A stretch of 64,000 nt of DNA. It comes from Macrostomum lignano (lineage: Eukaryota). Both the position numbers and the translations under genes were made by a program. Positions 16,201 to 46,045 of this stretch are shown here, piece by piece; the stretch's first letter is position 1; each line of letters begins with the position of its first letter. The notes below the pieces were generated by a model. The model was given only the letters and a program-made list of their open reading frames with translations. It did no database searches and was not told the origin of the DNA. The stretch lies in assembly GCA_002269645.1 (NCBI GenBank), contig NIVC01001948.1, positions 62,001 through 126,000 of the forward strand, written 5' to 3'.

Positions 16201-19200
16201 CTTGTTACGCCTGTTATCCAACTGGTTACACCTGTTGTTCAACTGGTTTAGATTTTCCGGTAGAACAGGCGATCATTTTGATAGCACAGGTAATCATTTT
16301 GATAGAACAGGTGATCATTTTGATAGCACAGGTGATCATTTTGATAGCACAGGTAATCATTTTGACAGAACAGGTCATCTCCTTGATAGAACATATATTT
16401 AAATTTACACTTGATACACTGCTACACTACAAAGAGTAGCTGAAGAACACACCCCCCGCATGCACTAAAAAACATAAAACAGGTGGTACGAACCAGCGGC
16501 CCATGGAACGTGATCTTTTTCGTTGTTATCGTATTCATGGGCTCGTTTTACCTGATCAACCTGATGCTTGCCGTGGTCACCATGAGCTATCAGGAGCAGG
16601 CGGCCGCCACAGGAAAGGTATTTTCTAAATTAAAATATGTTTGTTTTAATTGACTTGAAGAATGTGTACATGCAAAACATGGGGCCGTATAGCCCAGTGG
16701 TCTGGCGCGGCGTTCTGATGTGCCAGCGGCCCAGGCTCGATTCCAAGTGCAGTCGCATTAATTTTGGGCTAAATTGGAATCTCGGCTTGGCTCTGCTCGT
16801 GCAATTAACGATGAGGGCCAACTCCTATGGCACAGTGAAGTGTACATGCCTAACGATAAACAAAGTTAGGGCCGATGTACACTCCTGTGGAGTGTGTGCC
16901 AGGGTGCACACAGTCCCTGCCTCTAATAAAATATCAAAGAGAAAACTATTTTCAGTAGTTAGGCTCAAATTACTGCATTTTAAAAATAGAGAACATTAAA
17001 AAAATTAAATAAAAATCCACTTTGCTAAAAGTTAATCGCGAATTTAAAATTCCTCAACTCCCAAATAAAAGTGCATTCAGAAATTGATCACCAAACCGTG
17101 TTTCTCTCCTCTCAACTCCATCGTGTAGAAAAACAAAAAATTCCAAGCGTCAGTTGAACAGCCTGACGTCACCGCCAATGGCGTCGAGAATGGAACGGTA
17201 GGGTGAGAAGGACGCAGAATGGAATTCTGAGAAATTTCTGCGTACACCTACTTTAAGTAGGGTGAAAAGCATTGCAAAAAGATTAAAACACTTGAAAAAT
17301 CCCTCTTCAGGAATCGGAGCAGTTGCTCGTAAGATTGTAAAAAAATTTCAATTTTTAATAGTTTTTTTGAACAGAACAGAAAACTTCAGCAATTTCTTCT
17401 ATTTATTAATCTATCTGTGATTATTACGTTCACTTAATTTATTCATTCAATCGCTTATGTCTTTGAAATAGCTGTTTTTTGGATGCTCGTTTAGACTCAG
17501 CTTTACACAAACTCCAGGTTATAAATATTCAATGAGCCGTTGGATACTAATAGATGTTTGAATATCACAATAATTATAATCTTGTAATTGTTTAATCAAT
17601 TATGCAACTATCCTGTTTGTATTTTATTTACAAGTGCAAGTAGGTTTGCAGCTAAAGTCACCAACTTGAATGGCAGGTTTTTGGGCTATCTTTCTATATA
17701 TGTATATACGAATCACTCTAATATCTATTTAGTGTAAATTGTGCGTCATATTATTGGTCCATTCTTGCCCAAGAATGGATGTGTACTTTTGCTTTTACAC
17801 ATTTTTTACTTACTCATACACACTTGCGACACTACTGACCCATCTACAGTCTGACCCATCTGCAGTGTGACCCAAAACCATACATCTGCAGTCTGACCCA
17901 TCTGCAGTCTGACCCATCTGCAGTCTGACCCATCTGCAGTGTGACCCAAAACCATACATCTGCAGTCTGACCCATCTGCAGTCTGACCCATCTGCAGTCT
18001 GACCCATTTGCAGTCTGACCCATTTGCAGTCTGACCCATCTGCAGTCTGACCCATCTGCAGTCTGACCCATTTGCAGTCTGACCCTTCTGCAGTCTGACC
18101 CATCTGCAATCCGACCCATCCCGAAATCTGACCCAAAACCATACATCTGTAATCTGACTCACAGCGCTAGTAACCCATCAACCGGAGTCTGACCCACAAC
18201 CCCATCACCAACTTTCTCCGTCATGCAACAGGCCGAAGAACGCGAGAAGTCGGAGCGAAAGCAGAAGAAGCGCCAGCAGAAGAAGAACGCGGCTGCAGAA
18301 AAGTCGAAGGAGACAAAGAAAGACGACTTAGGAGAGGCTGACAAAAACGGAAAGAAGAAGAAGAAGAAGAAGAAAGACAAGCAAAAGTCGACAAACAGCG
18401 AAGACGAAGCCACCGATAAAGACAAAAAGGGCAAGTCTTCCAGTGGCAAGCAGGACGACGGTGAGACAGCTACGGAGACCGGCAGCGTGGACACCAAGCA
18501 GCTGATGAAGACAGCAACGGAGGCTGGCGGCAAAGGCAAAGGAGAAAGTGACAGCGGCATGGGAAGCCAGGCGGAAGTGCCAGCGAAAGCTGTGAGTGAA
18601 AGTAGCTCAAATGCAGCTAAATAGTAGTTCAGTGGTAGCTCAGTGGTAGTGCAAACGTATTTTAGTGGTGGCTCAATGGTAGTTCAGTTGTAGTTCAGTA
18701 GTAGCTCAGTGGTAGTGCAAACGTATTTTGGTGGTAGCTCAATGGTAGTTCAGTGGTAGCTCAGTGTCAGTTCTGCGGTAGTTCAGTGGTGTTCAGCGGT
18801 AGCTCGGTGGTAGTTCAGTGGTAGTTCAGCGGTAGTTCAGTGTTAGCTTATAGTGATAGCTAAGTGGATAGCTCTATTAGCCGAATTATGAGCTTTAAAA
18901 GAGACGCTCTTACTTGAAATCTCTGCACTCTGCTCTGCCCTCTCAAGCAGGAGACAACAGCGCCTGGGGCTGAGAATTCCAATGCACCGGACACAGAAAA
19001 TGACATCACCGTGGAATTGCAACTCGACGACAAGGACGACGATGATGAGGATAAACCTGTCATTGTTGTTGCTGGTATGGAAGGTTTTTATGCTCTCGTA
19101 GAGGGAGGTAGAGCAAAGGGGTAGAAAAAAGAGGATAGAGCTAGGGGGTAAAAAAGAGAGTGTAGAGCTAGGGGGTAAAAAGAGAATGTAGAGCTAGGGA

Positions 19201-22200
19201 TAGAGAATAGAAGAGAAGGTAGAGCTAGGGATCGAGAATAGATTAGAGGTAAGGGTGAAGTCAAAAACAAGGAAGAAGTAGATCCTTTCATGTTCGCTGA
19301 GTACTAGAAAGGCATATGTGCTAGCCTCAACGGGGGGCTCAGTGGCTAGTCCACGTATACTAAAATCACACAAATTCAACTCCAGACGATGGCAAGGAGT
19401 ACGTGGACCGGAATTGCCCTTGCTGCGGCACATGCTGTCGAAACTACATTTGCTGGTTAAAATTTCAAAACGGCCTCTTCAAATTCGTTACGGACCCGTT
19501 TTTTGATTTGTTTATCACGTTTTGCATCGTGGCCAATACGGTGTTTATGGCTAGCGAGTATTATCCTATGTCTCCCTCATACTCGAACGCTTTGGACTGG
19601 ATTAACACAGTGAGTTATTTGTTTTATTCATTTGACATATTGCACTAGATATTAACTACAGAGCGCCTTCTGAGGCGTGTATTATGATTTGTATAAGCGC
19701 GCACTATGATTTGCACAAGCTTTCACTATGATTTGTATAAGCGCTCACTATTGTTTGCATTAGTCCGAATTCTTATTTGTTTAAGCGCGCAATTGTATTT
19801 GCACGTCTGTACAAGGCTTTTGTTAAATGCGTGTTTATGCCTGTGCGCTCTTAAAAAACTGCCCAACCTTGACGACTAGATAAAATTTCTGTTTTTAAAT
19901 TGCAGGCTTTCACCATTGTGTTCACCGTGGAAGCCGTCTTGAAAATCTTCGCAATGAGCAGAGAGTACTTTTTGTCCGGTTGGAATATATTCGACTTCGT
20001 AGTAGTTATTGCTAGCCTGATTGACCTCACGGTCCAGGACATTGATGGACTGTCCATATTTCGGTCGTTCCGATTGGTGAGGCGACGACTGGTGTACACT
20101 GCTTAGGGTTCTGTAGCGATGGTCTGTAGGGTGCTGTAGGATGAGCTGTAAGATGTGCTGTAGGGGCGCTGCAGGAGTGTTGTAGGGGTGCTATAGGATT
20201 TGCTCTAGAGGCTCAGTAGGATTTGCTGCTGAGGTGCTGTAGGGGTGCTGTAGGATTTGCTGTACGGGTGCTGTAAGATGTGCTGCAGGAGTGTTGTAGG
20301 ATTGACTTTAAGATGGACTGCAGGGGAGCTGTCGGGTCCTGTAAAAACACTGTATACTGTAGGGAGTGCTACAAAAAGGCTGTAATGATACTGTAAGGTT
20401 CCTGTATGACAGTGCGGAGTGCTGTAAAAGTTTACAGCTAATCTTTTCGACTCTGTTAGCTGTAGTAGTGCTGTAGCGGTTCTGTCAGAGATACTGTAGT
20501 GAGTTTCTGTAAAAATGCTGTTAGATGTGCTGTAGCGGTTCTGTATCGGGGTAATTACAGTGGGCAGTCCTACAATAAGTAACTTAAACAAATCTAGAAT
20601 AAAATCTTACACTATCCTCACCAACAGTTTCGAGTGTTCAGATTGGCTCAGTCGTGGGTGACAATGCGAAAACTGCTGCTGATCATCTTCTCGGCCATTG
20701 GAGCGGTTGGAAACCTGACCTTCATCTTGTTCATCATCATCTTCATATTTGCTGTCATTGGCAAGCAGCTGTTTATGAAAACATACACTGCTGCCGTTTT
20801 CGGCTCCGCCAACGATATTCCGAGGTGGAACTTCGAAGACTTCGGGCACAGCATGCTGATGGTGTTCAGGATTCTGTGCGGCGAGTGGATCGAGGCGCTG
20901 TGGGACTGCATGCGAGCGAATGGGGAGCTGTGTGCTCTGGTGTTCTTCCCATCCCTGATTCTGGGGAATTTCATGGTGGGTTTATTGTCTTCATTTTGGT
21001 GGCAAGTCGCTGTTAGATGAGGTGTCACATGAGTTGTAACCTGTTAGATATGATGTGCTACATGTTAGATATGAGGTAGCAAATGTTAGATACGAGGTGT
21101 CACCTGTTAGATACGAGGTGTCACATGTTAGATATGAGTTGTAACCTGTTAGATATGAGGTATCCCATGTTAGATATGATGTGTTACATGTTAGATAGGA
21201 GGTGTCACATTTATACATGATGTGTCAAATGTTAGATACGAGGTGTCACCTGGTAAATACGAAGTGTCCCCTGTTGGATATGAGTTGTAGCCTGTTAGAT
21301 ATGAGGTATCCCATGTTAGATATGATGTGTTATATGTTAGATAGGAGGTGTCACACGTTAGATATGAGACTTCACATGTTCGCTCGTAGATATGAGATGT
21401 CAAATGTTAGATATGAGGTGTCTCCTGTTAGATGTGAGGTATCACCTGTTAGATATAAGGTGTCACCTGTTATGTATGTACGGCTGATCAATTTACTCTG
21501 AAAACTTACTCATTCTCTCAACCAGGTGCTCAATCTTTTTTTGGCTCTGCTATTGAACTCGTTCAGCAACGACAAGCTCGGCAAAGATGACAGCGACCAG
21601 GATGCATCCAAGCTGTCCCTGGCCTTGGACCGGATCAAACGGTATTGCTGCTGCTGCTGTCCAACGAGAAAGAAGAAAGGCTCAGAAGAAGAAGAGGAGG
21701 CCAAAGCCAAGGAAGGCGATGCGGCGGACGGCAAAGCCGTAGATGCTCCTGCCAAGACGCACGCTGACTTGGACAGCGCCCTCGGCAGCGACAATACACC
21801 GCCAGGCCACAGTGAGGGGAATATTATGATTGATTTCTGTAGGTGTCGGTAGCGCAGGAGGGAATAATATTTAATCACGATAATTGATTACACCTGCCCT
21901 TAATGGCCAGATGTGCAACCGACAGCTCAGCCGCAGCTATTGCGCGGTGCATCTGAGGGCTGCGTACGGCTGTTCAGTCCAAGGATTGGGAGGGGGGTCG
22001 CCACACACACCCTTAATTAACCCATCTACTGCTGGCACCCATTTTACAGCAGGGGTGAACTGAAGCAATGAAGCAATGCAGAATTAAGTGTCTTGCTCAA
22101 GAACCCCCGACCATTCAGTCGTGAGTCCGACGCTCCAACCACTTAGGCTTACAACATCTACCTCGAAGCAGAGGGGAGCCCTACCCTAACTCTACTCCAC

Positions 22201-25200
22201 AAGGGTCAATGTCTACGTCAGAATGGAGTTAGAAATGAAACAAGGAGAAAGTCAGCCGCTGTAAACCCTGAGGCGAGCTTATGCTTGAGTACGTATCCAT
22301 GTGGCAAATGATTGATTGACTTACGAGCAACTCGTCCCCAAACACCAGAGCCTGGACACGAGCACGGCAAGCGTCATCACGGCAAGAAGAAGCACAAGCG
22401 ACACCATCGAAAGCGACACCGCAAAGACAACGGCGCCGACGCCGACGGCGTAATTGTTGACGAGCCAACTGGCGACGAGGACAAAGAGGCCGACAAAGAC
22501 GGAGAAAACGAAGGAGACCAGGACAGCATACTGGTCGACTGTTGCTGTCCGGTGTGCATGAGACCGTGCCAGCCGGGAGCAAAGTGCTCCTTCTGCTCCT
22601 GCTGCTTGTGCCTGGCAGGCACGCCTCACGGCGATCGGTGGACCAAGTTCAGAAGCGGCGCCCTGAAGATCACCTCGCACAAAGTGTTCGAAGGCATTAT
22701 TTTGTGCATCATCTTTGCCAGCTCGATTTGTCTGGTAATGACAAAGACAGGAAGAGGCTAGGGAATATAGAAGAAGAAAGGAGACGAGAAAAGAGGAGAT
22801 CAGGGTGAAGACAGCTGATAAGAGACACAAGCCTTGAGCAGGCCGGATTTCTATTGGGTCAAGTTTCAAAGGACCCGAGGGCTGGATAGAGGGAGGCCAT
22901 GGCCAGTGGCCGTTTTCCGACCCGTCTAATAAGGACGCAAAGGACGGCGACCCCCCCCCCCCCTAGACCCTTTAGACGTTGTAGCAGAACTATGAGACTT
23001 GGATTTTCAGAACTAGTTTGAATACAACGAAAACCCATTGATTCACTCTTCCAGTGCTTCGAAGACATTTACCTGGATGACCAGCCAACACTGAAGACGG
23101 TCCTAGGCTACCTGGACATTGTATTCACCATAATATTCTGCATCGAAATGGTGCTCAAATGGGTCTCTATGGGATTTAAGAAATACTTCACCGAGTTTTG
23201 GAGCATCCTTGACTGTATTATCGTTTGTGTGAGTATGGCAAAGAGGAATTGTCTTCGTAGCAAATATATGAAGTAAAATATGAAAGATATATGTATAGTT
23301 GGATATAATCAATCAATACCGCAGATATCGATTGCTGACTTGATGATCAGCGCCCTGACAACCAATGCTGGCCAGATCAGCGCGCTCAGGGTACTGAGAG
23401 CCTTGCGAGCATTCCGACCGCTGAGGACCGTGAGCCGTTGGGAAGGCATGAAGGTGAGGGCTAACATTAGCAATTAGCAACCCCGGGACAAAGGATAAGA
23501 TCCAGAGTTTTAGAAAGAGCACTGATGCCCAACAAGCAGTCACGCCCGTTCTGCTGACGAACCCTGTAAACAAATAATCACACTGGATGTACAGAGGCTC
23601 CGATTTTCTCTCATGAACACGCCTTAGTAACAAAGACCATACTTTGTAAAACAGGACGCTAAATTCAAAGATTGTGTAAATTTTTGGAGGCCAATTTCTC
23701 CGTAAAAGTACACACACTGCGGAGATAGGAAAATAATCAGTTTTCATCACAAAATCAATGATTGCATTTGATCTGGGGTAAGTGAAGAAATACCATTAAG
23801 CTGTGTAATGAAAGTTTCATTTTCATACTATTTTATTTTTATTTTATTAGCTCAAAGTTGTATGCAATAACTGTATGCATGCATGCAGGTAGCCAGTAGG
23901 AACTAATATGCATTGAAATGGAATTATACCTACAATAATAGCTTCAGCATTTGATTCAAGAAGTATCAAACACAAAATTTAAACAAGCTATAGTGCAAAC
24001 TAGTGAGTAGTTACACCTTTGGGCTTTCTTCCTATTTCCACAGTGTACTTTTCCCGGAAATAGGCCTTCAAAAATTACACGATATTTAAGTTTTAGATCC
24101 TGTAATACAACGGTTGGTCCTTTTGGAAAAGGAGCCAGAAACGCTAACCGCTAAGTTGCACTCTTCCCATCACTCTATGAATTACATGTCTGAAATCTTT
24201 ATAAGTGTTAGACAATCTACATTTAAATAATGTACGCGTAGTTCTTACATTACATTTAACAATCTACTATTACAACAGATCGTGGTCAACTGCCTGGTTA
24301 AAGCTGTACCATCCATCGGCAACGTGCTGCTAGTGTGCATGGTGTTCTGGCTAATATTCAGCATCACTGGAGTGCAATTCTTCAAAGGCAAATTCTACTT
24401 TTGTCAGGACTCAGAAGGCAATCAGTTGGATTATAGCGTCATACAGAACAAAACTCAGTGCGAGAACAACTCAGCGGCTGGTTACTCCTGGACTAATACT
24501 AACATCAACTTTGACAATGTGTTCATTGGCTACATAGCGCTGTTTCAAATTGTAAGTACTATCAGCCTAGACAACTGGCTCCTAGCACTGTATGCATGTA
24601 TATTAGGCTTATTGTGCTAGTGTCGGTGGCTCACAAAATTCTTTATTCAAAAAGATGCAAAGATAGCGTAAATTTTGATACTAAATTATTGTAAGACATG
24701 TCCCTGGAGTCATAAGCTCTGGAGGCTGGTATGAGCCATGAGTCATAAGAGTCGGAGGTTAGTATGAGCCATGAGTCATAAGACTCGGAGGTTGGTATGA
24801 GCCATGAGTCATAAGAGTCGGAGGTTAGTATGAGCCATGAGTCATAAGAGTCGGAGGTTAGTATGAGCCATGAGTCATAAGAGTCGGAGGTTGGTATGAG
24901 CCATGAGTCATAAGAGTCGGAGGTTAGTATGAGCCATGAGTCATAAGAGTCGGAGGTTAGTATGAGCCATGAGTCATAAGACTCGGAGGTTGTCTACTTT
25001 AAGTAATATGTTGATAGCTCGTAGTCGGAAGAATATTTAGCAATAGTCTTAAGTAATTGTATTGAAGGCATTACTATCAATTTTGTATTAGAATAATCTT
25101 GACAACAATTAGTTCATAAACGCCAATCAAGTTGCACCTTCAATACTCAATCCAACGCTCCCCACCCAGGCCACCTTCGAAGGCTGGATGGAGCTGATGA

Positions 25201-27217
25201 AATCCGGGGTCGATGTGACGGGCGTCGATCAGCAGCCGAAGCGGGAGGCGTCTCTCGGTTATTACGTATTTTTCGTCATCTTTATCATTGTTGGCGCATT
25301 CTTCACCCTAAATCTGTTCATTGGTGTCATTATTGACAATTTCTACTCGTTGAAACGAAAGGTACGTGGTGCAGCTTTCAAAATAATAATATTGAATACA
25401 CAAAACTGATTTTTAGAGTGAAGCTTTGTTGTAATGGTTATGATTTTGACGTTCACTGTATTTGACTTTTTTAGAAAGAAAACGTTCTTGAAATGTTTTT
25501 GACTCCGAGCCAGCGCAGCTATTATCACACAATGAGAAAGCTGGGTAAGAAGAAACCGCAGAAGACTGTACAGAGACCCAAGGTTTGTGCATTTTGATTT
25601 GTAAGTGTTGATTCTCCAAAGCAAGATTTAATGTAATTAACTCTTTTTAACCTAAAAACATCCTACAGAATCGATTCCAAGACTTCTTCTTCGATGTTGC
25701 CATGAGCAGCAAATTCGAGATGGTGATTGTTATTCTGATATTCCTCAACATGGTGGCGATGATGATCGATCACTACAAGGAACAACCAGCGATCACCCAG
25801 TGCCTCAGCTTAATTAACATCATTTTCACGGCCGTGTTCACTGTTGAAGCAATCATCAAGATAATTGGTCTCAGATGGCACTATTTCCGATTCGCATGGA
25901 ACGTTTTCGATTTTGTTATCGTCATACTCAGTATTGTTGGTAAGTCATGGTGGCTATGATAGGAGGAGCATTGGAACACTCATATACAAAGAACGACGCA
26001 ATTGACTTGGTAGATTTGCAATACGCAAGTCCAGAAGGTGAGATATTAATCATCATTATCTCTTGTTTTTTTTCACCAAATAATTAATAGGTGCCATCCT
26101 GAGCGACTCAGTCAGCAACGTGTTTGTGCAGCCAACGCTACTTCGAGTAGTCAGAATATTCAGAATCGGTCGAGTTCTGCGCCTTATCAAAGCGGCTAAA
26201 GGCATCAGACAGTTGCTGTTCGCTCTGGTGATATCACTACCAGCCCTGTTCAACATTGGCGCTCTGTTAGCTCTGATTGTATTCATCTACTCAATAGTTG
26301 GCATGAGCCTATGGGGCAACGTCATTCACAATGGCGCTATCAACGACCTCGTCAACTTTGAGACCTTCGGCAGGAGCATGGTACTGCTGTTCCGGCTGAT
26401 TACCAGCGCCGGATGGAACGACGTTCTCGATGGCCTTATGGTTAAACCGCCGAGCTGCAACAGCACCCACATCATACGGAACGGCGTTGCTAAGGAGTCC
26501 AGCAATGGCAACTGCTCGATACCTGAGGTGGCCATTCTCTACATGGTAACCTTCGTGTTCTTCACCAGATTGATCGTTATCAATTTGTACATTGCAATCA
26601 TTCTGGAGAACTTCAGCCAGGCGCACGAACAAGAGGAGGTCGGCATCACCGATGACGATTTTGAGATGTTTTATCAGGTGTGGGAGCGGTACGACCCGCA
26701 TGCGTCACAGTACATCAAATACGACTTATTATCCGACTTCGTCGCTGACCTAGAAGAGCCGCTCGGCATACCAAAGCCGAATATCATCGCCCTGACCTCA
26801 TTCGACATAGCCATCGTCGAAGGCGACAAGTTGCACTGTCTAGACATCCTGGTATCGCTGGTCCGCAACGTTCTCGGCGATATCGAAGACTCGGACCAGT
26901 TCCGCGACACAATGAACGAAATTGAGAAGAAATTCCGCGACACTTTTCCAACCAGAGTCCGCACGGTGGCCATCTCAACCACAATGCGACGCAAGAAAGA
27001 GGATATCGCGGCCAAGACTTTACAGCGGGCCTGGCGAAGGCACAAAGCTCAGCTGGCATTCAAACAGGTGACAGAGAATGCCATGGCCATGGCCGGGCGG
27101 AACATTGCCAACATGCCGGGCGCGCCGGGTCAGCTGGACTACGGATCAACCGTGTCGCTGCGACACGCCAAACCGACAAAACCGGCCCCACCAAATGTCT
27201 TCACGATTGCCACTTGA
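13300..27217 (+). CDS. Nav2: Voltage-gated cation channel alpha subunit, Nav2 (DSC1/BSC1-like) class, ~1933 aa, 21 exons
   Basis: Exons 13300-13827, 14333-14541, 14631-14759, 14843-14952, 15536-15984, 16483-16617, 17129-17197, 18232-18591, 18951-19074, 19386-19609, 19906-20076, 20628-20975, 21526-21811, 22349-22734, 23055-23228, 23325-23453, 24279-24551, 25170-25361, 25475-25582, 25669-25939, 26091-27217. All are GT-AG and phase-consistent (5802 nt). There are four S4 segments; pore loops TLDFW, CGEWI, TFEGW, TSAGW; III-IV linker EMFLTPSQ; and an IQ-like [12 protein letters not shown]. Confidence 0.95.
13940..14245. repeat. ~58-bp tandem repeat, each unit carrying CTGATTGGC (reverse CCAAT box), Nav2 intron 1
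   Basis: CTGATTGGC occurs at 13947, 14005, 14065, 14120, 14179 and 14235. Confidence 0.8.
14990..15400. repeat. Degenerate ~10-bp (TAGGTAGATT-like) repeat, Nav2 intron 4
   Basis: Visible periodic TTAGGT/TAGATT units. Confidence 0.7.
16095..16390. repeat. Two adjacent ~20-21-bp minisatellites (TTACACCTGT.. and ACAGGTGATCATTTTGATAG), Nav2 intron 5
   Basis: Tandem units are visible. Confidence 0.7.
16682..16925 (+). mobile_element. tRNA-derived SINE, family A copy 1 (Nav2 intron 6)
   Basis: It has an A-box-like TAGCCCAGTGG and a B-box-like GGCTCGATTCC. The head and body are shared with an opposite-strand copy at 53720-54021. Confidence 0.7.
17834..18195. repeat. 15-bp minisatellite (CAGTCTGACCCATCTG-type), Nav2 intron 7
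   Basis: Tandem units are visible. They generate the spurious [16 protein letters not shown] ORFs. Confidence 0.9.
18623..18860. repeat. ~10-bp (GTAGTTCAGT/GTAGCTCAGT) repeat, Nav2 intron 8
   Basis: Tandem units are visible. Confidence 0.75.
20100..20570. repeat. Degenerate ~10-bp (GCTGTAGG) repeat, Nav2 intron 11
   Basis: Periodic CTGTAG units. Confidence 0.7.
21015..21475. repeat. 21-bp minisatellite (TTAGATATGAGGTGTCACCTG), Nav2 intron 12
   Basis: Tandem units are visible. Confidence 0.85.
21890..22149 (-). mobile_element. CORE-type (MIR-like) tRNA-derived SINE, Nav2 intron 13
   Basis: The minus strand reads AGCCTAAGTGGTTGGAGCGTCGGACTCACGACTG (tRNA-like head) then TTGAGCAAGACACTTAA...CTTCAGTTCACC..CTGTAAAATGGGT. 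This resembles the recalled MIR core TTGGGCAAGTCACTTAA..CTCAGTTTCCTCATCTGTAAAATGGG. Confidence 0.65.
24712..24992. repeat. 33-bp minisatellite (ATGAGCCATGAGTCATAAGAGTCGGAGGTTAGT) x~8, Nav2 intron 17
   Basis: Near-identical tandem units. Confidence 0.9.
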
Positions 27218-31806: not shown

Positions 31807-32356
31807 ACAACAACAACAACAAAATACGCTGTCAGGATGGCAAAAGTCAGCGTCACAGGGCGCGCTTCATGGCTTGGGCGCGAACAAAGGCCGCGCCACC
31901 GGCAGTGTCCGGGGCGCCGGCGTCAGCCAGCAGACAGTCGAAGTAACGCCGAGTTCGCGCTTGACCTCGCCGGTAGGGTGCCTGCAGCGTGAGCAGCAGC
32001 ACCTCCTGCACCGGCTGTGGGCAGTACGACTCGGTGCGGATGAGATGGCCTGCGAGCTGGAGTCGCCGACGGCGCAGTAGATCGCTTGGACGTGGCAGGC
32101 CAGCGCGGCGATAGAGTGCCGCGTTGTTGACTCGCTCGACGCCGATGTTGAAGGCGGCGCGCAGCAGGCCAGCGTGCGCCGCATCGACTTGCTGTTCGAG
32201 TGAGTCCGTCAGCGTCCAGGTCTCGGCGTTGTAGAGCAGGACGGTCTCGATTACCGCCTGGAACAGCGCCGCCCTCTGGCGGTCCGGTAGGGCCTCGGAC
32301 TGCAGGACTGCCCTCACAGAACGAAAGGCAGCCCAGGCAAGCCCGCGGCGGCGTCG
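31807..32356 (-). mobile_element. 5'-truncated RTE-like non-LTR retrotransposon with (TTG)n tail and 7-bp TSD
   Basis: The ORF has the post-RT motifs AWAAF..LLYNAETWTLT..RRRRLQLAGHLIR and an intact frame. The element ends in a TTG tail. CAGGCTA is duplicated at 31800-31806 and 32357-32363. Confidence 0.85.
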
Positions 32357-33373
32357 CAGGCTAGTAAGGTGCACCAGAGTCGCAGAACTCTCCATCAGCT
32401 CCATCAATAATAGATTCTGGGTACTGCTAACTCAGAAGTAAGTGCCCTTGTTGTCAGAAACTTTTGCACTGAGACTGAGACCTAGAAGCTCTTATGCATT
32501 TACTGGAAATGAAAATTGTCTTTTATACTACATGTCACAGACATTTTAAACTTGCATGCAATTAGCTTTGCGCTGTGCTCTAGCTCTGTTTAATATTTAC
32601 AGTACAATAGCATTTTAAAATTGAGTTTTAAGATTGCATACATGACTCTTCATATATCTTGCTCGAAATCAGCCTCTGTACCATAGTTAGCGTCCGACTT
32701 AAAAATGAGATAATGCACAATGAGATATAAATGATGTGCATGATAGTACTTTGGTAAAACGTTTTAATCATAATCAGCTATGTCCTGAGAAATCTCTACA
32801 GTTTGATTCGGGACTTGATTAATGACCCAAAATCGAGCCGGCTGCCGGCTTATGGTTAAATGAAAAAATAACTTCAACACAGTATGCTGCAAGAGCTTGT
32901 CAATGTTTCCTAATACTCCTACTGACTAAAGTTTTATTTGAATAACAGCAGAACAGGAATGCAATCAATAGCTACCAGTATAACCAACTGTGCTGAATCC
33001 AGCCAATAAAGAGACGAGATTCTTCTGCAATACCTCAAGACTGCGGCGGAGCTTTCAAAGAAATTAGCCTGTTCCGTCTGCTGTTCCATTGTTCCCGAAT
33101 TGCCTGGCACAAAGGCTGACTAACAATGCATAAATTTTCTCTTTAACTTGTAGAAAATTGCTTTAGAACTCTTTTTTAAGTGCGTTGTGAGAAGTTTCTG
33201 TTCTGGGAACTTACTCCTAGAGATGAAGCTATGTTCCTGTATTCACTCGCAGCAACGCAGTAAAAAACTGGATGCAAGCTTAAATTTTTACTGCTATAGA
33301 TTTTTATCTATTAACGACTCGCTCCGGAACAAGCAAAGATGCAGAGCGGCTCTTTGTTTGCAGTCACTTTACC

Positions 33374-38529: not shown

Positions 38530-40973
38530 TTATTTCCCTTTATGATCTTCGCCGTCAGCCTCATCGGTGTCAATAAACAGCAGGGGCAGCATGCCCAGAA
38601 GGCAGCCCAGCGAGATGCCCAGACTCCGGCCAAACACGGTGGCCCATCTGGTCGATCGCAGCTCCAGCTGTTGCGGAGTCAATCTGGGCGTCTCGAACCC
38701 CAGCCGGCTGGTCATGCCTTCCACCCAGCTGGCCAGGCTGAGGCCGGCCAGGTCGGACACCCAGTTGCCAAGCGCCGCTGCGGCTAACGTGCTGATGCAG
38801 AAAGCTGCACCCAGGGTCAAGTCAATGTACTCGCCCTGTCAGATGGAGAGCGCGCTGGGAGGTTTAACACTCAGTTATAGATGCTTTTTTGTCTCGGTTC
38901 TCCATCTCAGCCTCTCTATATCTACCTCCATCTCCCCATCCCCCTCCCATCAATCTCACCCTCTCCCTCTCATCAATGTCACCCTCTCCCTCTCACTCTC
39001 ATCAATGTCACCCTCTCCCTCTCATCAATCTCACCCTCTCCCTCTCATCAATCTCACCCTCTCCCTCTCCCTCTCATCAACGTCACCCTCTCCCTCTCAT
39101 CAATCTCACCCTCTCCCTCTCATCAATCTCACCCTCTCCCTCTCATCAATGTCACCCTCTCCCTCTCCCTCTCATCAATGTCATCCTCTCCCTCTCATCA
39201 ATGTCATCCTCTCCCTCTCATCAATCTCACCCTCTCCCTCTCATCAATCTCACCCTCTCCCTCTCATCAATGTCACCCTCTCTCTCTCCCTCTCATCAAT
39301 GTCATCCTCTCCCTCTCATCAATGTCACCCTCTCCCTCTCATCAATGTCACCCTCTCCCTCTCATCAATGTCACCCTCTCCCTCTCATCAATGTCACCCT
39401 CTCGCTCTCATCAATGTCACCCTCTCCCTCTCATCAATGTCACCCTCTCCCTCTCATCAATGTCACCCTCTCCCTCTCATTAACTCCCTTAGCCACAGCA
39501 AACTCACAGCCACAATCATGATGGCATTGTCGAAGAATCCAAATCCAACAAACGGAATGGCGCTTAAAGTGAACACTGAAATAAATATTTAACAATGAAA
39601 CAGAGTAACTAGCAGAACAATAAGGAAGATGATTAATATTATACAATATTCGTACCTTGACGTAATTGATCTCTTGTAGGCTGAGCCACTCCAGCAGTAG
39701 CAGTTTTAGTTTCAGGCTCAGCTGACGCAGCTGAGGCGCTTGTTTGATCGGCTGTTAAATAATGCATAAGAGGTCGCATAGTTTAATAAATAATACATGT
39801 GGCCCAGCAACTGAGGATCTGGGAGGCTGGCTCAGCAACTGAGGATCGGGAAGGCTGGTGGTCCAGCAACTGAGGATCTGGGAGGCTGGTGACCCAGCAA
39901 CTGAGGATCTGGGAGGCTGGTGACCTAGCCACTGACGATCTGGGAGGCTGGTGACCTAGCCACTGAGGATCTGGGAGGCTGGTGACCTAGCCACTGAGGA
40001 TCTGGGAGGCTGGTGACCTAGCCACTGAGGATCTGGGAGGCTGGTGACCTAGCCACTGAGGATCTGGGAGGCTGGCCCAGCAACTGAGGATCTGGGAGGC
40101 TGGCCCAGCAACTGAGGATCTGGAAGGCTGGCCCAGCAACTGAGGATCTGGGAGGCTGGCCCAGCAACTGAGGATCTGGGAGGCTGGCCCAGCCACTGAG
40201 GATCTGGGAGGCTGGTGACCCAGCAACTGAGGATCTGGGAGGCTGGTGACCTAGCCACTGAGGATCTGGGAGGCTGGTGACCTAGCCACTGAGGATCTGG
40301 GAGGCTGGCCCAGCAACTGAGGATCTGGGAGGCTGGCCCAGCAACTGAGGATCTGGGAGGCTGGCCCAGCCACTGAGGATCTGGGAGGCTGGTGACCCAG
40401 CAACTGAGGATCTGGGAGGCTGGTGACCTAGCCACTGAGGATCTGGGAGGCTGGTGACCTAGCCACTGAGGATCTGGGAGGCTGGCCCTGCAACTGGGTA
40501 TCTGGGAGGCTGGCCCTGCAACTGGGGATCTGGGAGGCTGGCCCTGCAACTGGGGATCTGGGAGGCTGGCCCTGCAACTGGGGATCTGGGAGGCTGGCCC
40601 TGCAACTGGGGATCTGGGAGGCTGGCCCTGCAACTGGGGATCTGGGAGGCTGGCCCTGCAACTGGGGATCTGGGAGGCTGGTAAAATCCAGCCAAGGCTC
40701 CTCACCCGCAGTCCCATGTTGCTCAGCATCCAGTCTCAAAGCGGCCATCAGTTCTAACCGCTCCATCGCGTTGAGCCGGCGCACGTAGCTGCTGGCCCAT
40801 TTCGGAGGCCGCTTGAGCACAGTGCAGCGAACTGGACTGGTGCTGATGCTGCGACTATTTAACTGGTTGGCGTGACGAGGAACCGCCACATTTCCATGGC
40901 AACAAGAGTTCGAGGCCAGAATAGCAGATTGTATGAAAACATTCTTGGTCTTCTGTAGGTGACTCGCCAGCAT
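38530..40973 (-). CDS. TMEM65: Transmembrane protein 65 (mitochondrial inner membrane), ~245 aa; exons 40973-40706, 39751-39656, 39575-39508, 38835-38530
   Basis: The spliced product PTRDQLRQVFTLSAIPFVGFGFFDNAIMIVAGEYIDLTLG..STLAAAALGNWVSDLAGL..LGCLLGMLPL matches the recalled TMEM65 signature. Introns are GT-AG and phase-consistent. Confidence 0.92.
38920..39482. repeat. ~22-bp pyrimidine-rich minisatellite (CTCTCCCTCTCATCAATGTCACC), TMEM65 intron 3
   Basis: Tandem units are visible. Confidence 0.9.
39803..40680. repeat. 28/31-bp minisatellite (GCCCAGCAACTGAGGATCTGGGAGGCTG), TMEM65 intron 1
   Basis: Tandem units; the same family occurs at 46735-47165. Confidence 0.9.
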
Positions 40974-41451: not shown

Positions 41452-41730
41452 ATGGAGCTACCTATATACGAAGCCCTTAATTTGCTCGAAGAGGAACCTG
41501 GGCCGCGTCCAAGGGAATTTCGAGAGCGCATGAACTTCGTCGACGACTGGGATTTTAGACAGCGCTTTAGAATGTTGCCACCTACGTTCGAGCATCTGCT
41601 CGAACGAATTCGCCCAACCTTGGAGTATGGTAGCGTTCGAAGTGATCAATTGAGTGCCAGGGAGCAAGCGTTGACCGCATTGCGTTTCTACGCCTGTAAC
41701 GGCTTCTACCACGTACTTCGAGACGCGTGC
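41452..41730 (+). mobile_element. PIF/Harbinger transposase N-terminal fragment (truncated)
   Basis: DFRQRFRMLPPTFEHLLERIRPTL..LSAREQALTALRFYACNGFY matches the Harbinger/HARBI1 N-terminal pattern. Homology stops before the DDE core, and the termini are unresolved. Confidence 0.7.
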
Positions 41731-42394
41731 CGCTTTTTCGATTTGGCTTCTGCGTTATTCGCAAAACTACCGAACAAAACGGCCTTTTTGTCTCTCATGA
41801 GAGACAGAAAGAGGAGCTTTTGTTCCGGCGGGGACAAGGTTGTGCACTTTTAAAATCTTTTCAGTTTTGACTTCTAAGCTAGCGAGACTAGAGCCTTATA
41901 TACTACCCGCTCCTTCTCTTTCTCCTTCTCCAACTCAGCTACTTCTTCAGCTGCAAAACGCATGTCTATGGCACGAATTCTATGCTAGAGAGAATAGCAG
42001 TATACTGATATTTACCAGTTCCTTCATGAAACCAGATTTTAGCAGACTGCTGAATATCCGCGGTTATTTTAGCTGCTGCTAACTGGTAATTTACCAGTTG
42101 CTCATGAAATCGGTCCCCGGTGGCGAGGCGCCTGCCTGGGGTATACTGTATATTTATAGTAAATTAAAAGAACAAGCTAAAACATACCTATTGGACAATA
42201 TTTCCATATGAAAACTGTCTAGTGTATTGCAACACATGCCAAGTTTATTTTATTTTAACCAAACAACTATTACAGGTACAAACGGTTTCTTTATTAGTGT
42301 AATTAGTCAACTAAGAAATGCCAATTAACATTATTAATATACAAACAGGATAAAGTTTATAGTTGAAGTAAAATAAACTTATTGAACGCCAGAA

Positions 42395-42670
42395 TCAGTT
42401 GTCGGGTCCTTCACCACCGGGAATCATCAATGCAATATTGTTGCCATTGAGCAATATCTGCTCAAGCCTCGTAACTTTCTTACCCTGAGAGCTGATCTCG
42501 TACACCACAACATCCTCAAGCACCATATTCACGTAGGGATCAAATCCCAACAAGGTGCCAACAAGTTCTTTGTCGCCTTTCATTTTGATGTGAATTTTCG
42601 AACCGATGCATTTGTCAACGAGTTCCAGTGGCATGATTTGAGACGGATTCTGGGGACCTGAGCTGGCCAT
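42395..42670 (-). CDS. LSM5: U6 snRNA-associated Sm-like protein LSm5, 91 aa, intronless CDS
   Basis: [56 protein letters not shown] is the LSm5 Sm fold. Confidence 0.95.
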
Positions 42671-42730
42671 GGCTGAAAGCTGAAGGTTTCTCGCAGTTCA
42701 AAATATGGTTTTTAAGATTGCTTACCTGGT

Positions 42731-43735
42731 GTCAAGCTGAAGGAGAATTACCCTACTAGTATCAAGCTGAAGGGGAATTACCCTACTAGTATCAAGCTGA
42801 AGGGGAATTACCCTACTAGTATCAAGCTGAATGGGAATTACCCTACTAGTATCAAGCTGAAGGGGAATTACCCTACTAGTATCAAGCTGAAAGGGAATTA
42901 CCCTACTAGTATCAAGCTGAATGGGAATTACCCTACTAGTATCAAGCTGAAGGGGAATTACCCTACTAGTATCAAGCTGAATGGGAATTACCCTACTAGT
43001 ATCAAGCTGAAGGGGAATTACCCTACTAGTATCAAGCTGAAGGGGAATTACCCTACTAGTATCAAGCTAAAGGGGAATTACCCTACTAGTATCAAGCTGA
43101 AGGGGAATTACCCTACTACGCTCGTAGTTGAAGGGGAATTACCCTACTAGTATCAAGCTGAAGGGGAATTACCGTACTAGTATCAAGCTGAAGGGGAATT
43201 ACCCTACTAGTATCAAGCTAAAGGGGAATTACCCTACTAGTATCAAGCTGAATGGGAATTACCCTACTAGTATCAAGCTGAAGGGGAATTACCCTACTAG
43301 TATCAAGCTGAATGGGAATTACCCTACTAGTATCAAGCTGAAGGGGAATTACCCTACTAGTATCAAGCTAAAGGGGAATTACCCTACTAGTATCAAGCTG
43401 AAGGGGAATTACCCTACTACGCTCGTAGTTGAAGGGGAATTACCCTACTAGTATCAAGCTGAAGGGGAATTACCGTACTAGTATCAAGCTGAAGGGGAAT
43501 TACCCTACTAGTATCAAGCTGAAGGGGAATTACCCTACTAGTATCAAGCTAAAGGGGAATTACCCTAATAGTATCAAGCTGAAGGGGAATTACCCTACTA
43601 GTATCAAGCTGAAGGGGAATTACCGTACTAGTATCAAGCTGAATGGGAATTACCCTACTAGTATCAAGCTGAAGGGGAATTATTAGTATCAAGCTGAGGG
43701 GAATTATCCTACTAGTATAAAGTTAAAGGGGAATT
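42731..43735. repeat. 30-bp minisatellite (GCTGAAGGGGAATTACCCTACTAGTATCAA) x~33
   Basis: Near-identical tandem units with no spacers. Confidence 0.95.
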
Positions 43736-44117
43736 CTTAGATGCTTTAGAGTTCGGAGGGAATTACTCAGATTTCACGAGACCCGAAACTCCCTAGTAAA
43801 ATATTTAACAAACCAAAGCGAGACAGAACAATTAAAAAATTGTGTAAATCAACAAAATTAATGCCAATACAATCAGTCTGTTTTCCACCGTGTATTTTCC
43901 AATTTTAAAGTTCAACCGACAGATGTCCGCCCGGACAGAGTTCATCGAGTTTTGAAAGAATATGGCCTGAGTCAGCATGAAAACGTGTGTAAACCAAGTT
44001 GACAATTGACGATGAAAATAATGTGCATGCATACATACGAACATTTCGGGGATCACACACGATCGTCTATTCTAAAGCTGGCTAAATAATCCAAGCTGAA
44101 GCTAACTATTTTGACTT

Positions 44118-44498
44118 GCACGTCGACCACATGTGTCTGCATCAGTTCCGCCCCCGCTGGTCACTGGCCCCCACCCAGGTGGAGCCTCTGGACCTCCAAC
44201 AGGTGACACCAGGTGACAATGTAGATCCTGTTGCAATTATGTCAGAATTTTCTTATCAAGCTTCAAATGGGCAAAACTCAACTGCTGGGCATCCTCAGCT
44301 GGTCTCTCAGGTATTCCGTCATCACCCGGACGCTGCCGAACCTTCAACAGGTGGCACTAGGTGACCATGAAGATCAACGTTGCAACAACGTGTTCATAGT
44401 CACCAAGTGCCACCTTTTGAAGGTCCAGAAGCTCCACCTGGGTGAAGGCCAGCGACCAACGAAGGCAGAACCGATGCAGACACATGTGATCGACGTGC
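44118..44498 (-). ncRNA. Candidate long hairpin RNA (hpRNA/pri-miRNA-like)
   Basis: Inverted arms 44118-44215 and 44401-44498. Of 15 mismatches, 13 are G:U pairs on the minus strand. A nested 31-bp stem-loop lies at 44341-44423. No expression data. Confidence 0.45.
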
Positions 44499-44789
44499 TG
44501 ATGAAATTTGGAGATTGGCGCACAGGGGTGTACTGAATACACTGGCGCTTATGGGAAAAATCCCACCTTCTGGCAGAATCGTCGAATATCTCGACGGTCC
44601 GGGGGGGGGGGGGCTGGAGACTTGATTCTTGTTTGAGAAGGTGCGCAATAAAAAGTTAGTCCGTGTTCTTGAATTTCGTGTGCCTGCGTTGCTCCGTTCC
44701 GGCGCAGCCAAAAAATTGTCAGGGGAGGGGGAATTCCGCCCTCTTTGGTAGTTATACTGTTAAACAGATCTAAAACTAGCTAAATGGGC

Positions 44790-46045
44790 CGAAAAATGAC
44801 TATAATTGGATCTAAAACTAGCTGAATAGACCTAAAAACACTAAACGGACCTGAAACCAACTAGATAGACCTAAAAAACTAACTAAATAGAACTAAAACT
44901 AGCTGAATAGACCTAAAAACACTAAACGGACCTGAAACCAACTAGATAGACCTAAAAAACTAACTAAATAGAACTAAAACTAGCTGAATAGACCTAAAAA
45001 CACTAAACGGACCTGAAACCAACTAGATAGACCTAAAAAACTAACTAAATAGAACTAAAACTAGCTAAATAGACCCAAAAAACACTAAACGGGACCTGAA
45101 ACCAACTAGATAGACCTAAAAAACTAACTAAATAGAACTAAAACTAGCTAAATAGACCCAAAAAACACTAAACGGGACCTGAAAACAACAGATAGACCTA
45201 AAAAACTAACCAAAATAGAACTAAAACTAGCTAAATAGACCCTTAAAACACTAAAACGGACCTGAAACCAACAGATAGACCTAAAAAACTAACTATAAAT
45301 AGAACTAAAACTAGCTGAATAGACCTAAAAACACTAAACGGACCTAAAAACAACTAGATAGACCTAAAAAACTAACTAAATAGAACTAAAACTAGCTAAA
45401 TAGACCCAAAAAAACACTAAACGAACCTGAAACCAACTAGATAGACCTAAAAAACTAACTAAATAGAACTAAAACTAGCTAAATAGACCCAAAAAACACT
45501 AAACGGACCTGAAACCAACTAGATAGACCTAAAAAACTAACTAAATAGAACTAAAACTAGCTAAATAGACCCCAAAAACACTAAACGGACCTGAAACCAA
45601 ATAGATAGACCTAAAAAACTAACTAAATAGAACTAAAACTAGCTAAATAGACCCAAAAAACACTAAACGGACCTGAAACTAACTAGATAGACCTAAAAAA
45701 CTAACTAAATAGAACTAAAACTAGCTAAATAGACCCTAAAAACACTAAAACGGACCTGAAACCAACAGATAGACCTAAAAAACTAACCAAAATAGAACTA
45801 AAACTAGCTAAATAGACCCTTAAAACACTAAAACGGACCTGAAACCAACAGATAGACCTAAAAAACTAACTATAAATAGAACTAAAATTAGCTAAATAGA
45901 CCCTAAAAACACTAAAACGGACCTGAAACCAACAGATAGACCTAAAAAACTAACCAAATAGAACTAAAACTAGCTAAATAGACCCAAAAAACACTAAACG
46001 GGACCTGAAACCAACTAAATAGACCTAAAAAACTAACTAAACTCG
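44790..46045. repeat. ~81-bp satellite built from ~20-bp subunits (TAGACCTAAAAA..), x~15
   Basis: Period 81 (GCTGAATAGACC at 44821 and 44902). Confidence 0.9.

What the first reader, a model, noticed from the sequence alone, without database searches (positions are those of the whole stretch)
44118..44498. Long inverted repeat whose mismatches are strand-specific G:U wobbles: candidate hairpin-RNA locus inside the gene cluster
Aligning 44118-44215 with the reverse complement of 44401-44498 gives 15 mismatches in 98 nt. Thirteen are transitions, all in one direction (left C vs T, or left A vs G). On a minus-strand RNA these are G:U pairs, giving an unbroken 82-bp helix (71 Watson-Crick + 11 G:U; 44118-44199 with 44417-44498). 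On the plus strand they would be A-C mismatches. If both directions were equally likely, 13 of 13 in this direction has probability 0.5^13, about 1e-4. The other two foldbacks in the window show no such bias. The minus strand is also the strand of the flanking FBXO7 and LSM5. This pattern is typical of selected RNA helices such as Drosophila hpRNAs that yield endo-siRNAs. An alternative is strand-specific A-to-I or C-to-U editing of an RNA that was later retro-integrated.
Basis: partly seen in the sequence, partly recalled or inferred. Interest (0 to 1): 0.8.

Follow-up and report, generated by a model that had tools for sequence, protein, structure and literature searches.

The report
Decaying inverted repeat with one-sided T-to-C burst
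The inverted repeat and its one-strand G:U pattern are real, but this is the cut-down remnant of a larger inverted copy of a flatworm (Macrostomum lignano) repeat, and the pattern comes from a recent burst of one kind of base change in one arm of one gene-copy, not from long-term selection for an RNA hairpin.

Summary
Observation confirmed. Arms 44118-44215 and 44401-44498 differ at 15 of 98 positions. Thirteen are transitions, and all give G:U on the minus strand. The result is an unbroken 82-bp helix (71 Watson-Crick + 11 G:U). RNA folding energy is -255 kcal/mol on the minus strand and -211 on the plus strand.

The context changes the reading. The window is Macrostomum lignano assembly Mlig_3_7 (NIVC01001948.1). 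The locus occurs on three contigs. One (L003) carries the identical element. The other (L002, haplotype B) has arms of about 310-360 nt. The window lost 264 bp at 44117|44118, so 44499-~44700 is an orphan outer right arm.

In haplotype B the arm mismatches are not clearly strand-biased: 15 G:U-minus, 8 G:U-plus, 13 transversions, plus indels. Four of the 82 pairs are broken there.

Polarising with four arm sequences shows 8 of the window's 13 wobbles are window-lineage T>C changes in the left arm. Left-arm divergence between haplotypes is 16%, against about 5% elsewhere. That is too fast for a purifying filter. It looks like an A>G burst on the gene strand, confined to the pairing region.

The cause is unresolved. 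It could be real hypermutation, or an editing footprint written in by the RNA-seq polishing used for this assembly. The arm unit also occurs elsewhere in the genome. The hpRNA reading is possible but unsupported.

The parts
44118..44236 (-). Left arm (3' arm of a minus-strand transcript), truncated. Only the inner 119 nt of an ancestral arm of about 310-360 nt remain. It carries the T>C cluster at 44127, 44149, 44153, 44154, 44157, 44170, 44171, 44196 (probably also 44210) and one G>A at 44206.
44118..44199 (-). 3' half of the unbroken 82-bp helix; pairs with 44417-44498 (71 Watson-Crick + 11 G:U on the minus strand).
44117..44118 (.). Junction of a 264-bp deletion relative to paralogous contig L002. 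The deletion removed the outer left arm plus about 58 nt of unique sequence. It is shared with contig L003. No GT-AG ends, so it is not an intron.
44237..44331 (-). Spacer or loop. Divergence between haplotypes is ordinary (5.4%).
44332..44379 (-). Third, partial copy of the arm's inner end, direct to the left arm. It pairs with 44393-44432 to form an inner hairpin (44338-44426). That hairpin scores 38.2 bits against Rfam mir-306, below the gathering score of 52, and the candidate mature/seed region aligns only partially to the mir-306 consensus in the cmscan alignment.
44380..44498 (-). Right arm, inner part (5' arm of a minus-strand transcript). It evolves slowly (5.9% between haplotypes). 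One window-lineage change at 44472 (T>C on +).
44499..44700 (-). Orphan outer right arm. It is homologous to both outer arms of the L002 copy, but its partner in the window has been deleted. It contains a poly-G tract (about 44601-44613) whose length differs among the three contigs.
42395..42670 (-). Single-exon LSM5, 1.45 kb downstream of the hairpin in the direction of transcription. A splice acceptor (tttcag) lies immediately before its ATG.
46193..49996 (-). It ends 1.7 kb upstream of the hairpin in the direction of transcription.

Best explanation
The feature is the truncated remnant of an older inverted duplication, about 0.8-0.9 kb, with arms of at least 310 nt and a spacer of about 145 nt. 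The duplicated unit is a non-coding repeat unit so far seen only in M. lignano. It sits between two tandem-repeat arrays in the spacer between an F-box-like gene and LSM5. The IR predates the split of the locus into haplotypes A (window and L003) and B (L002). Since then it has decayed roughly neutrally in B, and A lost most of its left arm through a 264-bp deletion. If the region is transcribed together with the co-oriented gene cluster (inferred, not shown), the minus-strand RNA folds into a long hairpin. The strand-specific G:U pattern that drew attention is not a long-term selective signature. It was produced in lineage A by a burst of T>C substitutions on the plus strand (A>G on the gene strand). 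The burst is confined to the pairing part of the left arm, which is the arm transcribed second. This is a hypermutation-like or adenosine-deamination-like footprint. Each change turns A-U into G.U, so the minus-strand fold loses only about 8 kcal/mol while the plus-strand fold loses about 42. Whether the burst is in the germline DNA, or was written into the assembly by Pilon polishing with RNA-seq reads, cannot be decided here.
For: Source and paralogues: LSM5 protein P0121 lies on NIVC01001948.1 (identical to the window) and NIVC01000422.1. P0241 lies on NIVC01000030.1. L002 has arms of 306-309 nt at 87.7% identity by BLAST, extending to about 350 alignment columns. The window and L003 share a 264-bp gap at the arm edge and are identical across the element. 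The L002 outer arms differ by about 8%, which exceeds the A-B divergence, so the long IR is ancestral. L002 mismatches are 15 G:U-minus, 8 G:U-plus and 13 transversions, with 33 gap columns. Its outer arms show 4/3/4 in the class assignable to old or left-arm changes. Four-sequence polarisation gives 8 window-left T>C, 1 window-left G>A and 1 window-right T>C, and no other window-specific change. Two wobbles are old and shared. A further M. lignano copy (P0242) has the codons expected for T at 44149, 44154 and 44170. A-B divergence is 16.2% in the left arm against 2.5-8.3% in the left flank, spacer, mid copy, right arm and orphan arm. Lineage-specific changes number 17 in the left arms against 3 in the right arms, p = 0.0026. 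T>C occurred at 8 of 25 T sites while A>G occurred at 0 of 16 A sites on the same strand, p = 0.014. The Poisson p for 8 T>C is about 7e-9. Reverting the 10 changes gives -247.5 (plus) and -261.6 (minus), the same small asymmetry as in L002 (-564 and -579). RNA-seq was used in polishing this assembly (PMC5730564). Free-living flatworms have active ADARs (PMC8797187).
Against: The changed adenosines show no ADAR-type depletion of a 5' G: 4 of 13 with 5' G changed, against 5 of 21 with other neighbours. One change (44206) is C>U type. Haplotype B would form an even longer dsRNA but shows no such burst. Three pairs changed on both sides between haplotypes (44134/44482, 44146/44470, 44180/44436), and the window helix has no broken pair. 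Both facts are what RNA-level selection would also give. Polarisation rests on only two independent haplotypes plus fragments of one further copy. No expression or small-RNA data could be consulted. The neutral rate is estimated from short, heterogeneous flanks; the right flank 44701-44800 is 14% diverged.
Confidence: 0.55

Rival explanations
1. It is a functional hairpin-RNA (hpRNA or endo-siRNA) locus. The minus-strand transcript is diced into siRNAs. The right arm, as guide side, is constrained, and the left arm, as passenger side, may change only in ways that keep pairing. This would yield G:U wobbles and compensatory pairs. The wobbles could also protect the DNA palindrome from instability or self-silencing, as in engineered G:U hpRNA transgenes.
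For: The 82-bp helix is unbroken and has 13% G:U on the gene strand only. All 10 window-lineage changes preserve pairing, p = 1.7e-5 against a one-third expectation. Three pairs changed on both sides. The right arm evolves slowly and the left arm fast. M. lignano has Dicer, Drosha, Argonautes and RNAi amplification factors (PMC4604429, PMC5594548). Engineered G:U hairpins are diced and work better because the DNA repeat is disrupted (PMC9263138).
Against: The paralogue breaks 4 of the 82 pairs and has unbiased mismatches and indels over its longer arms. The window copy lost two thirds of one arm. The left arm evolves about three times faster than its flanks, which a filter cannot cause. No complementary target was found in about 100 kb, and no coding homology of the arms. 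The arm is a dispersed repeat unit, not a gene fragment. No small-RNA evidence is available.
Confidence: 0.15
2. It is an assembly artefact. The real haplotype-A DNA has T at the eight to ten sites. The Cs were introduced when Mlig_3_7 was polished with Pilon using RNA-seq reads from a heavily A-to-I-edited hairpin transcript. If so, the pattern is indirect evidence for minus-strand transcription, dsRNA formation and editing, but it is not a genomic feature.
For: The paper states that Pilon was run with Illumina DNA and STAR-mapped RNA-seq (PMC5730564). The changes are A>G on the gene strand, clustered, confined to the pairing segment, and absent from the spacer and flanks. Planarians show ADAR2-dependent editing.
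Against: Two separately assembled contigs carry identical changes. DNA reads were used in the same polishing and should outvote RNA reads unless expression is very high and editing nearly complete at every site. There is no 5'-G depletion. Haplotype B shows no such changes. One change is not A>G.
Confidence: 0.12
3. There was no burst. The T/C differences are old differences between the two arms, retained in haplotype A and erased in haplotype B by patchy arm-to-arm gene conversion. The one-directional pattern is then chance plus conversion.
For: Three sites at which both arms differ between haplotypes show either that conversion between arms occurs or that compensation does. Parsimony with only two haplotypes cannot exclude it.
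Against: It needs several short conversion tracts that skip the old shared mismatches at 44163, 44186 and 44200. The independent copy P0242 has T-type codons at three of the four testable sites. Even as old differences, 11 G:U-minus against 0 G:U-plus and 0 transversions in 82 bp contrasts with 4/3/4 in the outer arms.
Confidence: 0.1
4. It is a foldback or MITE-type DNA transposon insertion whose terminal inverted repeats are the arms.
For: Long inverted arms with a short spacer. The unit occurs at another locus. The surrounding region is rich in repeats.
Against: No target-site duplication at the ends of either the short or the long form. No other copy in about 120 kb of available sequence. 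At the other locus the pieces lie in direct, not inverted, orientation. No transposase-related ORF.
Confidence: 0.08

Closest known systems
Drosophila hairpin-RNA (hpRNA) loci that yield endo-siRNAs (for example PMC10317233, PMC10292708)
   Same: A long inverted repeat with a short loop that would fold into an extended, nearly perfect dsRNA from one strand. It lies among genes, and the organism has the RNAi machinery.
   Different: Fly hpRNA arms are copies of their target genes. Here the arms are a non-coding dispersed repeat and no target was found. Small RNAs were not examined. The paralogous copy is decaying and the window copy is truncated.
Engineered G:U hpRNA transgenes (PMC9263138)
   Same: One arm carries transitions that leave the RNA helix intact through G:U pairs (13% here, 18-26% in the constructs) while disrupting the DNA palindrome.
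   Different: The constructs use C>T in the sense arm by design. Here the changes are mostly A>G-type, natural or artefactual, and no function has been shown.
ADAR hyper-editing clusters in long dsRNA formed by inverted repeats (PMC4365171, PMC5625713; flatworm ADARs in PMC8797187)
   Same: Clustered A>G on one strand only, restricted to the double-stranded part of an inverted-repeat transcript.
   Different: Here the changes are in the deposited genome sequence, not in RNA reads. The usual depletion of G 5' of edited sites is absent. One arm is affected far more than the other.
Genomic palindromes or inverted segmental duplications with arm-to-arm conversion and deletion-prone behaviour
   Same: Arms that partly co-vary (3 sites), and a deletion starting exactly at the arm edge. 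Established knowledge is that long IRs are fragile.
   Different: The arms are already about 12% diverged, so conversion is weak. Conversion does not explain a one-type, one-strand burst.

Membership tests
hpRNA / endo-siRNA hairpin locus | Inverted repeat giving an extended dsRNA hairpin on one strand | tested here: met
   82-bp unbroken helix on the minus strand. A hairpin with arms over 300 nt in the paralogue, -579 kcal/mol.
hpRNA / endo-siRNA hairpin locus | Transcription of that strand and Dicer-dependent 21-22-nt siRNA duplexes | not testable with these tools
   Indirect only: a co-oriented gene cluster, and an annotated LSM5 model on L003 with a GT-AG intron spanning the region.
hpRNA / endo-siRNA hairpin locus | Arms homologous or complementary to a target gene | tested here: inconclusive
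   No match in the window or in L002/L003. No Pfam domain in the arm ORFs. The only protein hit is a gene model that contains the repeat itself. The whole transcriptome was not searchable.
hpRNA / endo-siRNA hairpin locus | Helix maintained across related copies | tested here: not met
   In the paralogue 4 of 82 pairs are broken. Its whole IR has 13 transversions, 8 A.C-type mismatches on this strand and indels. The window copy lost 264 bp of one arm.
ADAR hyper-editing footprint | Clustered A>G on one strand within a dsRNA-forming segment | tested here: met
   9 of 10 polarised window-lineage changes are A>G on the minus strand, all within the paired arms.
ADAR hyper-editing footprint | Depletion of G immediately 5' of edited adenosines | tested here: not met
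   Changed/total by 5' neighbour: G 4/13, C 2/16, A 3/5. The sample is small.
ADAR hyper-editing footprint | RNA differs from DNA at the sites | not testable with these tools
   Needs read-level data. The assembly was polished with RNA-seq.
MITE / foldback transposon | Terminal inverted repeats flanked by a target-site duplication | tested here: not met
   No direct repeat flanks either the 381-bp form or the long form.
MITE / foldback transposon | Many dispersed copies with the same structure | tested here: inconclusive
   One other locus is known only through protein A0A1I8G181, with the pieces in direct orientation. The genome was not searchable by DNA.
mir-306 microRNA (Rfam RF00858) | Score at or above the family's gathering threshold and a conserved mature sequence | tested here: not met
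   38.2 bits against 52. In the cmscan alignment the window sequence matches the consensus only partially across the candidate mature/seed region. One haplotype difference (44407) falls in the candidate mature arm.

The most novel reading that the evidence does not exclude
The T>C burst is real germline DNA change caused by adenosine deamination linked to the hairpin transcript. One route: the already-made 5' arm of the nascent minus-strand RNA pairs with the displaced non-template DNA strand of the second (left) arm, and an ADAR-type enzyme deaminates dA in that DNA:RNA hybrid. Another route: an edited transcript templated repair of the break that also made the adjacent 264-bp deletion. Either would explain why only one arm, one strand and one base change are involved. 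It would be a heritable imprint of RNA-editing machinery on an animal genome.
Probability: 0.08. Interest if true: 0.85.

Novelty: new member of a known kind. Interest (0 to 1): 0.35.

Why it matters
If the hairpin were a selected hpRNA it would be the first described in a flatworm, but the paralogue comparison argues against selection. What remains of value is threefold. First, it is a worked example showing that a clean strand-specific wobble pattern can arise from a single lineage-specific mutational or editing-like burst. That weakens the use of G:U asymmetry alone as evidence for selected RNA structure. Second, it raises a concrete caution: Mlig_3_7 was polished with RNA-seq, so RNA-DNA differences may be embedded in this widely used reference. 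Third, if DNA reads confirm the changes, it is a rare natural case of arm-, strand- and base-specific hypermutation at a transcribed inverted repeat, next to a deletion junction. That would be directly testable in a transgenic model organism.

Tried and rejected
- **Rfam, whole window at gathering thresholds:** nothing.
- **Rfam, permissive scan of the region:** only sub-threshold generic miRNA-hairpin hits on the inner hairpin. mir-306 was rejected on score, on the only partial match of the candidate mature/seed region to the consensus in the cmscan alignment, and on lack of conservation.
- **Other copies or targets:** none in the window, L002 or L003.
- **F-box-like exon as a protein query:** no hits.
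- **Exact look-up of the 91-aa LSM5 ORF:** failed because the deposited model starts one codon upstream.
- **Using the partial mid copy as an outgroup:** it only covers 44192-44227 and cannot be rooted.
- **CpG deamination, GC-biased conversion and transcription-coupled asymmetry:** considered and rejected as sole causes. The first two are strand-symmetric. The third is far too weak, and A>G at A sites on the same strand is 0 of 16.
- **The 264-bp gap as an intron removed by RNA-seq polishing:** rejected, because it has no GT-AG ends on either strand.
- **DSB-resection damage:** predicts mainly C>T, which is not seen.
- **Pfam on all element ORFs:** nothing.
- **Metagenome scan with a conserved 24-mer:** 0 hits.
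- **Contig for P0242:** not on record.
- **L001 versus L003:** gave no extra information, because unique sequence there is about 0.2% diverged and the element is identical.

Full report
**1. The observation**

The inverted repeat exists as described. The repeat finder reports arms 44118-44236 and 44380-44498, 119 nt and 82% complementary, with 143 nt between them.

A base-by-base comparison gives 15 mismatches in the first 98 nt. Ten are left C against rc-right T. Three are left A against rc-right G. Two are transversions.

All 13 transitions are G:U on a minus-strand RNA and A.C on a plus-strand RNA (two-sided binomial p = 2.4e-4). ViennaRNA gives an unbroken 82-bp helix, 44498-44417 with 44118-44199, containing 11 G:U, on the minus strand only.

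Folding 44100-44520 gives -255.3 kcal/mol on the minus strand and -211.3 on the plus strand.

A third, partial copy at 44332-44379 is direct to the inner end of the left arm. It pairs with 44393-44432 and gives an inner hairpin.

**2. Where the window comes from**

A sodium-channel exon is closest to Macrostomum lignano (79% identity). The single-exon LSM5 (42670-42395, minus strand) is identical to protein P0121. That protein lies on two contigs of GCA_002269645.1. This is the Mlig_3_7 assembly, deposited as NIVC00000000 (PMC5730564).

- L001 (NIVC01001948.1) is the window itself; window coordinate + 62000 gives the record coordinate.
- L002 (NIVC01000422.1) is a paralogous copy of the whole locus with the same gene order; matching blocks are mostly about 89-98% identical.
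- A cluster mate of P0121 (P0241) led to a third contig, L003 (NIVC01000030.1).

TMEM9, an F-box-like gene, LSM5 and TMEM65 all lie on the window's minus strand. The hairpin sits 1.7 kb after the F-box-like model and 1.45 kb before LSM5. It is flanked by a 30-bp tandem array (42732-43735) and an 83-bp tandem array (44812-46041).

LSM5 has a splice acceptor directly before its ATG. On L003 the deposited model joins a 10-nt exon 18 kb upstream to this acceptor through a GT-AG intron. This is weak, indirect evidence that a primary transcript crosses the hairpin on this strand. The paper describes polycistronic transcriptional units and reports that 38.8% of genes are trans-spliced.

**3. The element is a truncated remnant**

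In L002 the inverted repeat has arms of 306-309 nt at 87.7% identity by BLAST, and about 350 alignment columns in the four-way alignment.

The window and L003 lack 264 bp exactly at 44117|44118. The missing segment is the outer left arm plus about 58 nt of unique sequence.

The window's 44499-~44700 is homologous to both outer arms of L002, so it is an orphan outer right arm. The outer arms of L002 differ from each other by more than the two haplotypes differ. The long form is therefore ancestral and the window form is a deletion derivative.

L003 is identical to the window over the element apart from the length of a poly-G run. Unique sequence around it is only about 0.2% diverged between these two contigs. 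In effect there are two independent haplotypes: A (window, L003) and B (L002).

**4. The same IR in haplotype B shows no clear strand bias**

Over the full L002 arms there are 283 matched columns and 33 gap columns (binomial p = 0.21).

| Mismatch class in L002 | Count |
|---|---|
| G:U on the minus strand | 15 |
| G:U on the plus strand | 8 |
| Transversions | 13 |

In the outer arms, the class that is old or specific to the L002 left arm contains 4 G:U-minus, 3 G:U-plus and 4 transversions.

The two strands of the L002 element fold to -578.7 (gene strand) and -564.3 kcal/mol.

Of the window's 82 pairs, counted across the two haplotypes:

| Behaviour of the pair | Pairs |
|---|---|
| Invariant | 63 |
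| Vary on one side only | 12 |
| Changed on both sides | 3 |
| Broken in B | 4 |

**5. Polarising the window's wobbles**

I used four sequences: left and rc-right arms of both haplotypes. The 13 wobbles sort as follows.

- Eight are T>C changes specific to the window's left arm: 44127, 44149, 44153, 44154, 44157, 44170, 44171, 44196.
- One is a T>C in the window's right arm (44472).
- One is a G>A in the window's left arm (44206).
- Two are old and shared by both haplotypes (44163, 44186).
- One (44210) falls in a gap in B.

No other window-specific change occurs in either arm. The B-specific changes are a mixture. In its left arm they are C>T, C>A, C>G, three G>A and one T>C. In its right arm they are an A>G and a T>G.

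A further M. lignano copy of the unit is seen only as translated pieces inside UniRef A0A1I8G181 (P0242). It has the codons expected for T at 44149, 44154 and 44170. It has C at 44127, and it is B-like at two of the co-varying sites. This supports T as the ancestral state.

**6. Rates**

A-B divergence by segment:

| Segment | Divergence |
|---|---|
| Left flank | 2.5% |
| Left arm | 16.2% |
| Spacer | 5.4% |
| Mid copy | 8.3% |
| Right arm | 5.9% |
| Orphan outer right arm | 4.6% |

Lineage-specific changes in the inner arms number 17 in the left arms and 3 in the right arms (p = 0.0026).

In the window's left arm, T>C hit 8 of 25 T sites, while A>G hit 0 of 16 A sites on the same strand (p = 0.014). 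Eight T>C changes, where about 0.4 are expected, gives a Poisson p of about 7e-9.

A purifying filter can only remove changes. It cannot raise the rate of the permitted class fifteen-fold or more. The pattern is therefore a burst: either hypermutation or repeated positive selection.

Reverting the ten changes gives -247.5 (plus) and -261.6 (minus).

**7. What caused the burst**

It is A>G on the gene strand. It is confined to the segment that pairs in the hairpin. It is absent from the adjacent spacer and flank. It is almost entirely in the arm transcribed second. That resembles adenosine deamination of a double-stranded substrate.

Two facts make this worth taking seriously. Planarians have ADAR1 and ADAR2, and show ADAR2-dependent editing (PMC8797187). 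Also, this assembly was polished with Pilon using both Illumina DNA and RNA-seq (PMC5730564), so edited RNA reads could in principle have been written into the sequence.

Several points count against a simple ADAR explanation:
- The changed adenosines show no depletion of a 5' G (4/13 with 5' G against 5/21 with other neighbours).
- One change is of the C>U type.
- Haplotype B shows no burst.
- Two separately assembled contigs agree, and DNA reads were used in the same polishing.

I could not obtain reads, so whether this is an artefact or real stays open. Strand-symmetric processes (CpG decay, GC-biased conversion) do not fit. Resection-type ssDNA damage predicts C>T instead.

**8. What the unit is**

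Searches of the element gave little:
- No gene homology.
- No Rfam family at gathering score.
- No target-site duplication.
- The inner hairpin scores 38.2 bits against mir-306, whose threshold is 52. The candidate mature/seed region aligns only partially to the mir-306 consensus, and one haplotype difference falls in the candidate mature arm.

The one distant protein hit (E = 1.2e-8) is an M. lignano gene model from the older assembly. It contains pieces of the unit twice, in direct orientation, beside unrelated sequence. The arm is therefore a dispersed repeat unit, not a copy of a target gene.

**9. Verdict**

The hairpin-RNA potential on the gene strand is real, and transcription is plausible. 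The inference of a selected hpRNA is not supported by the only comparative data available.

The most likely account is a decaying, truncated inverted duplication of a repeat unit that acquired, in one haplotype, an editing-like burst of A>G changes in one arm. A read-level check would settle whether the burst is genomic.

The hpRNA reading keeps some probability because every window-lineage change preserves pairing and three pairs changed on both sides.

Noticed in passing
window 44117|44118; L002 8434-8699: A 264-bp deletion begins exactly at the edge of the inverted repeat. It is shared by two of the three contigs. It has no splice-site ends and no obvious microhomology. It lies directly next to the T>C cluster.
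   Followed up: yes
window 44143-44157 and 44195-44196: The same short stretches of the left arm were hit independently in both haplotypes, and in the extra copy P0242. Three CCTTC motifs account for six T>C changes (five in A, one in B). Haplotype B has four changes within 14 nt (44143-44156).
   Followed up: partly
window 44338-44426 (-): The inner hairpin is miRNA-precursor-like (mir-306 38.2 bits, below the threshold of 52). It forms because part of the arm is present three times.
   Followed up: yes
window 42395-42676 (-); L003 10001-10010 and 28250-28531: LSM5 is a single exon with a splice acceptor immediately upstream of its ATG. One deposited model joins it to a 10-nt exon 18 kb upstream, across TMEM9 and the F-box-like gene. 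This suggests read-through or polycistronic transcription, or a chimeric model.
   Followed up: partly
window 44601-44613: A poly-G run of 13, 10 and 6 bases in the three contigs. It may be real length variation or homopolymer error in a PacBio-based assembly.
   Followed up: no
window 54752-61874: A microsatellite (ATAG)n of about 7.1 kb lies between two exons of a FAD-synthase-like gene on the minus strand (PAPS_reduct at 54191-54523, FLAD1_M at 63086-63664), presumably within an intron.
   Followed up: partly
window 13300-27217 (+): A multi-exon voltage-gated sodium-channel gene. Its last large exon is 79% identical to an M. lignano UniRef entry, presumably a paralogue. Several introns are filled with tandem arrays.
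   Followed up: partly
window 39799-40682 and 46729-47169: The same 28-bp tandem repeat occurs on both sides of LSM5. It is open in frame and overlaps the 3' part of the F-box-like model region. Many other arrays (periods of about 10-331 bp) fill the intergenic and intronic DNA.
   Followed up: no
window 41452-41853 (+) and 31853-32407 (-): By eye these ORFs resemble the N-terminus of a Harbinger/HARBI1-type transposase and the C-terminal part of a LINE reverse transcriptase. Pfam gave no hit, so this is unconfirmed.
   Followed up: partly
window 51879-52321 / 52864-53306: The longest 'inverted repeat' in the window is only (AGAC)n facing (GTCT)n microsatellites around the first exon of TMEM9. 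It is not a comparable foldback.
   Followed up: partly
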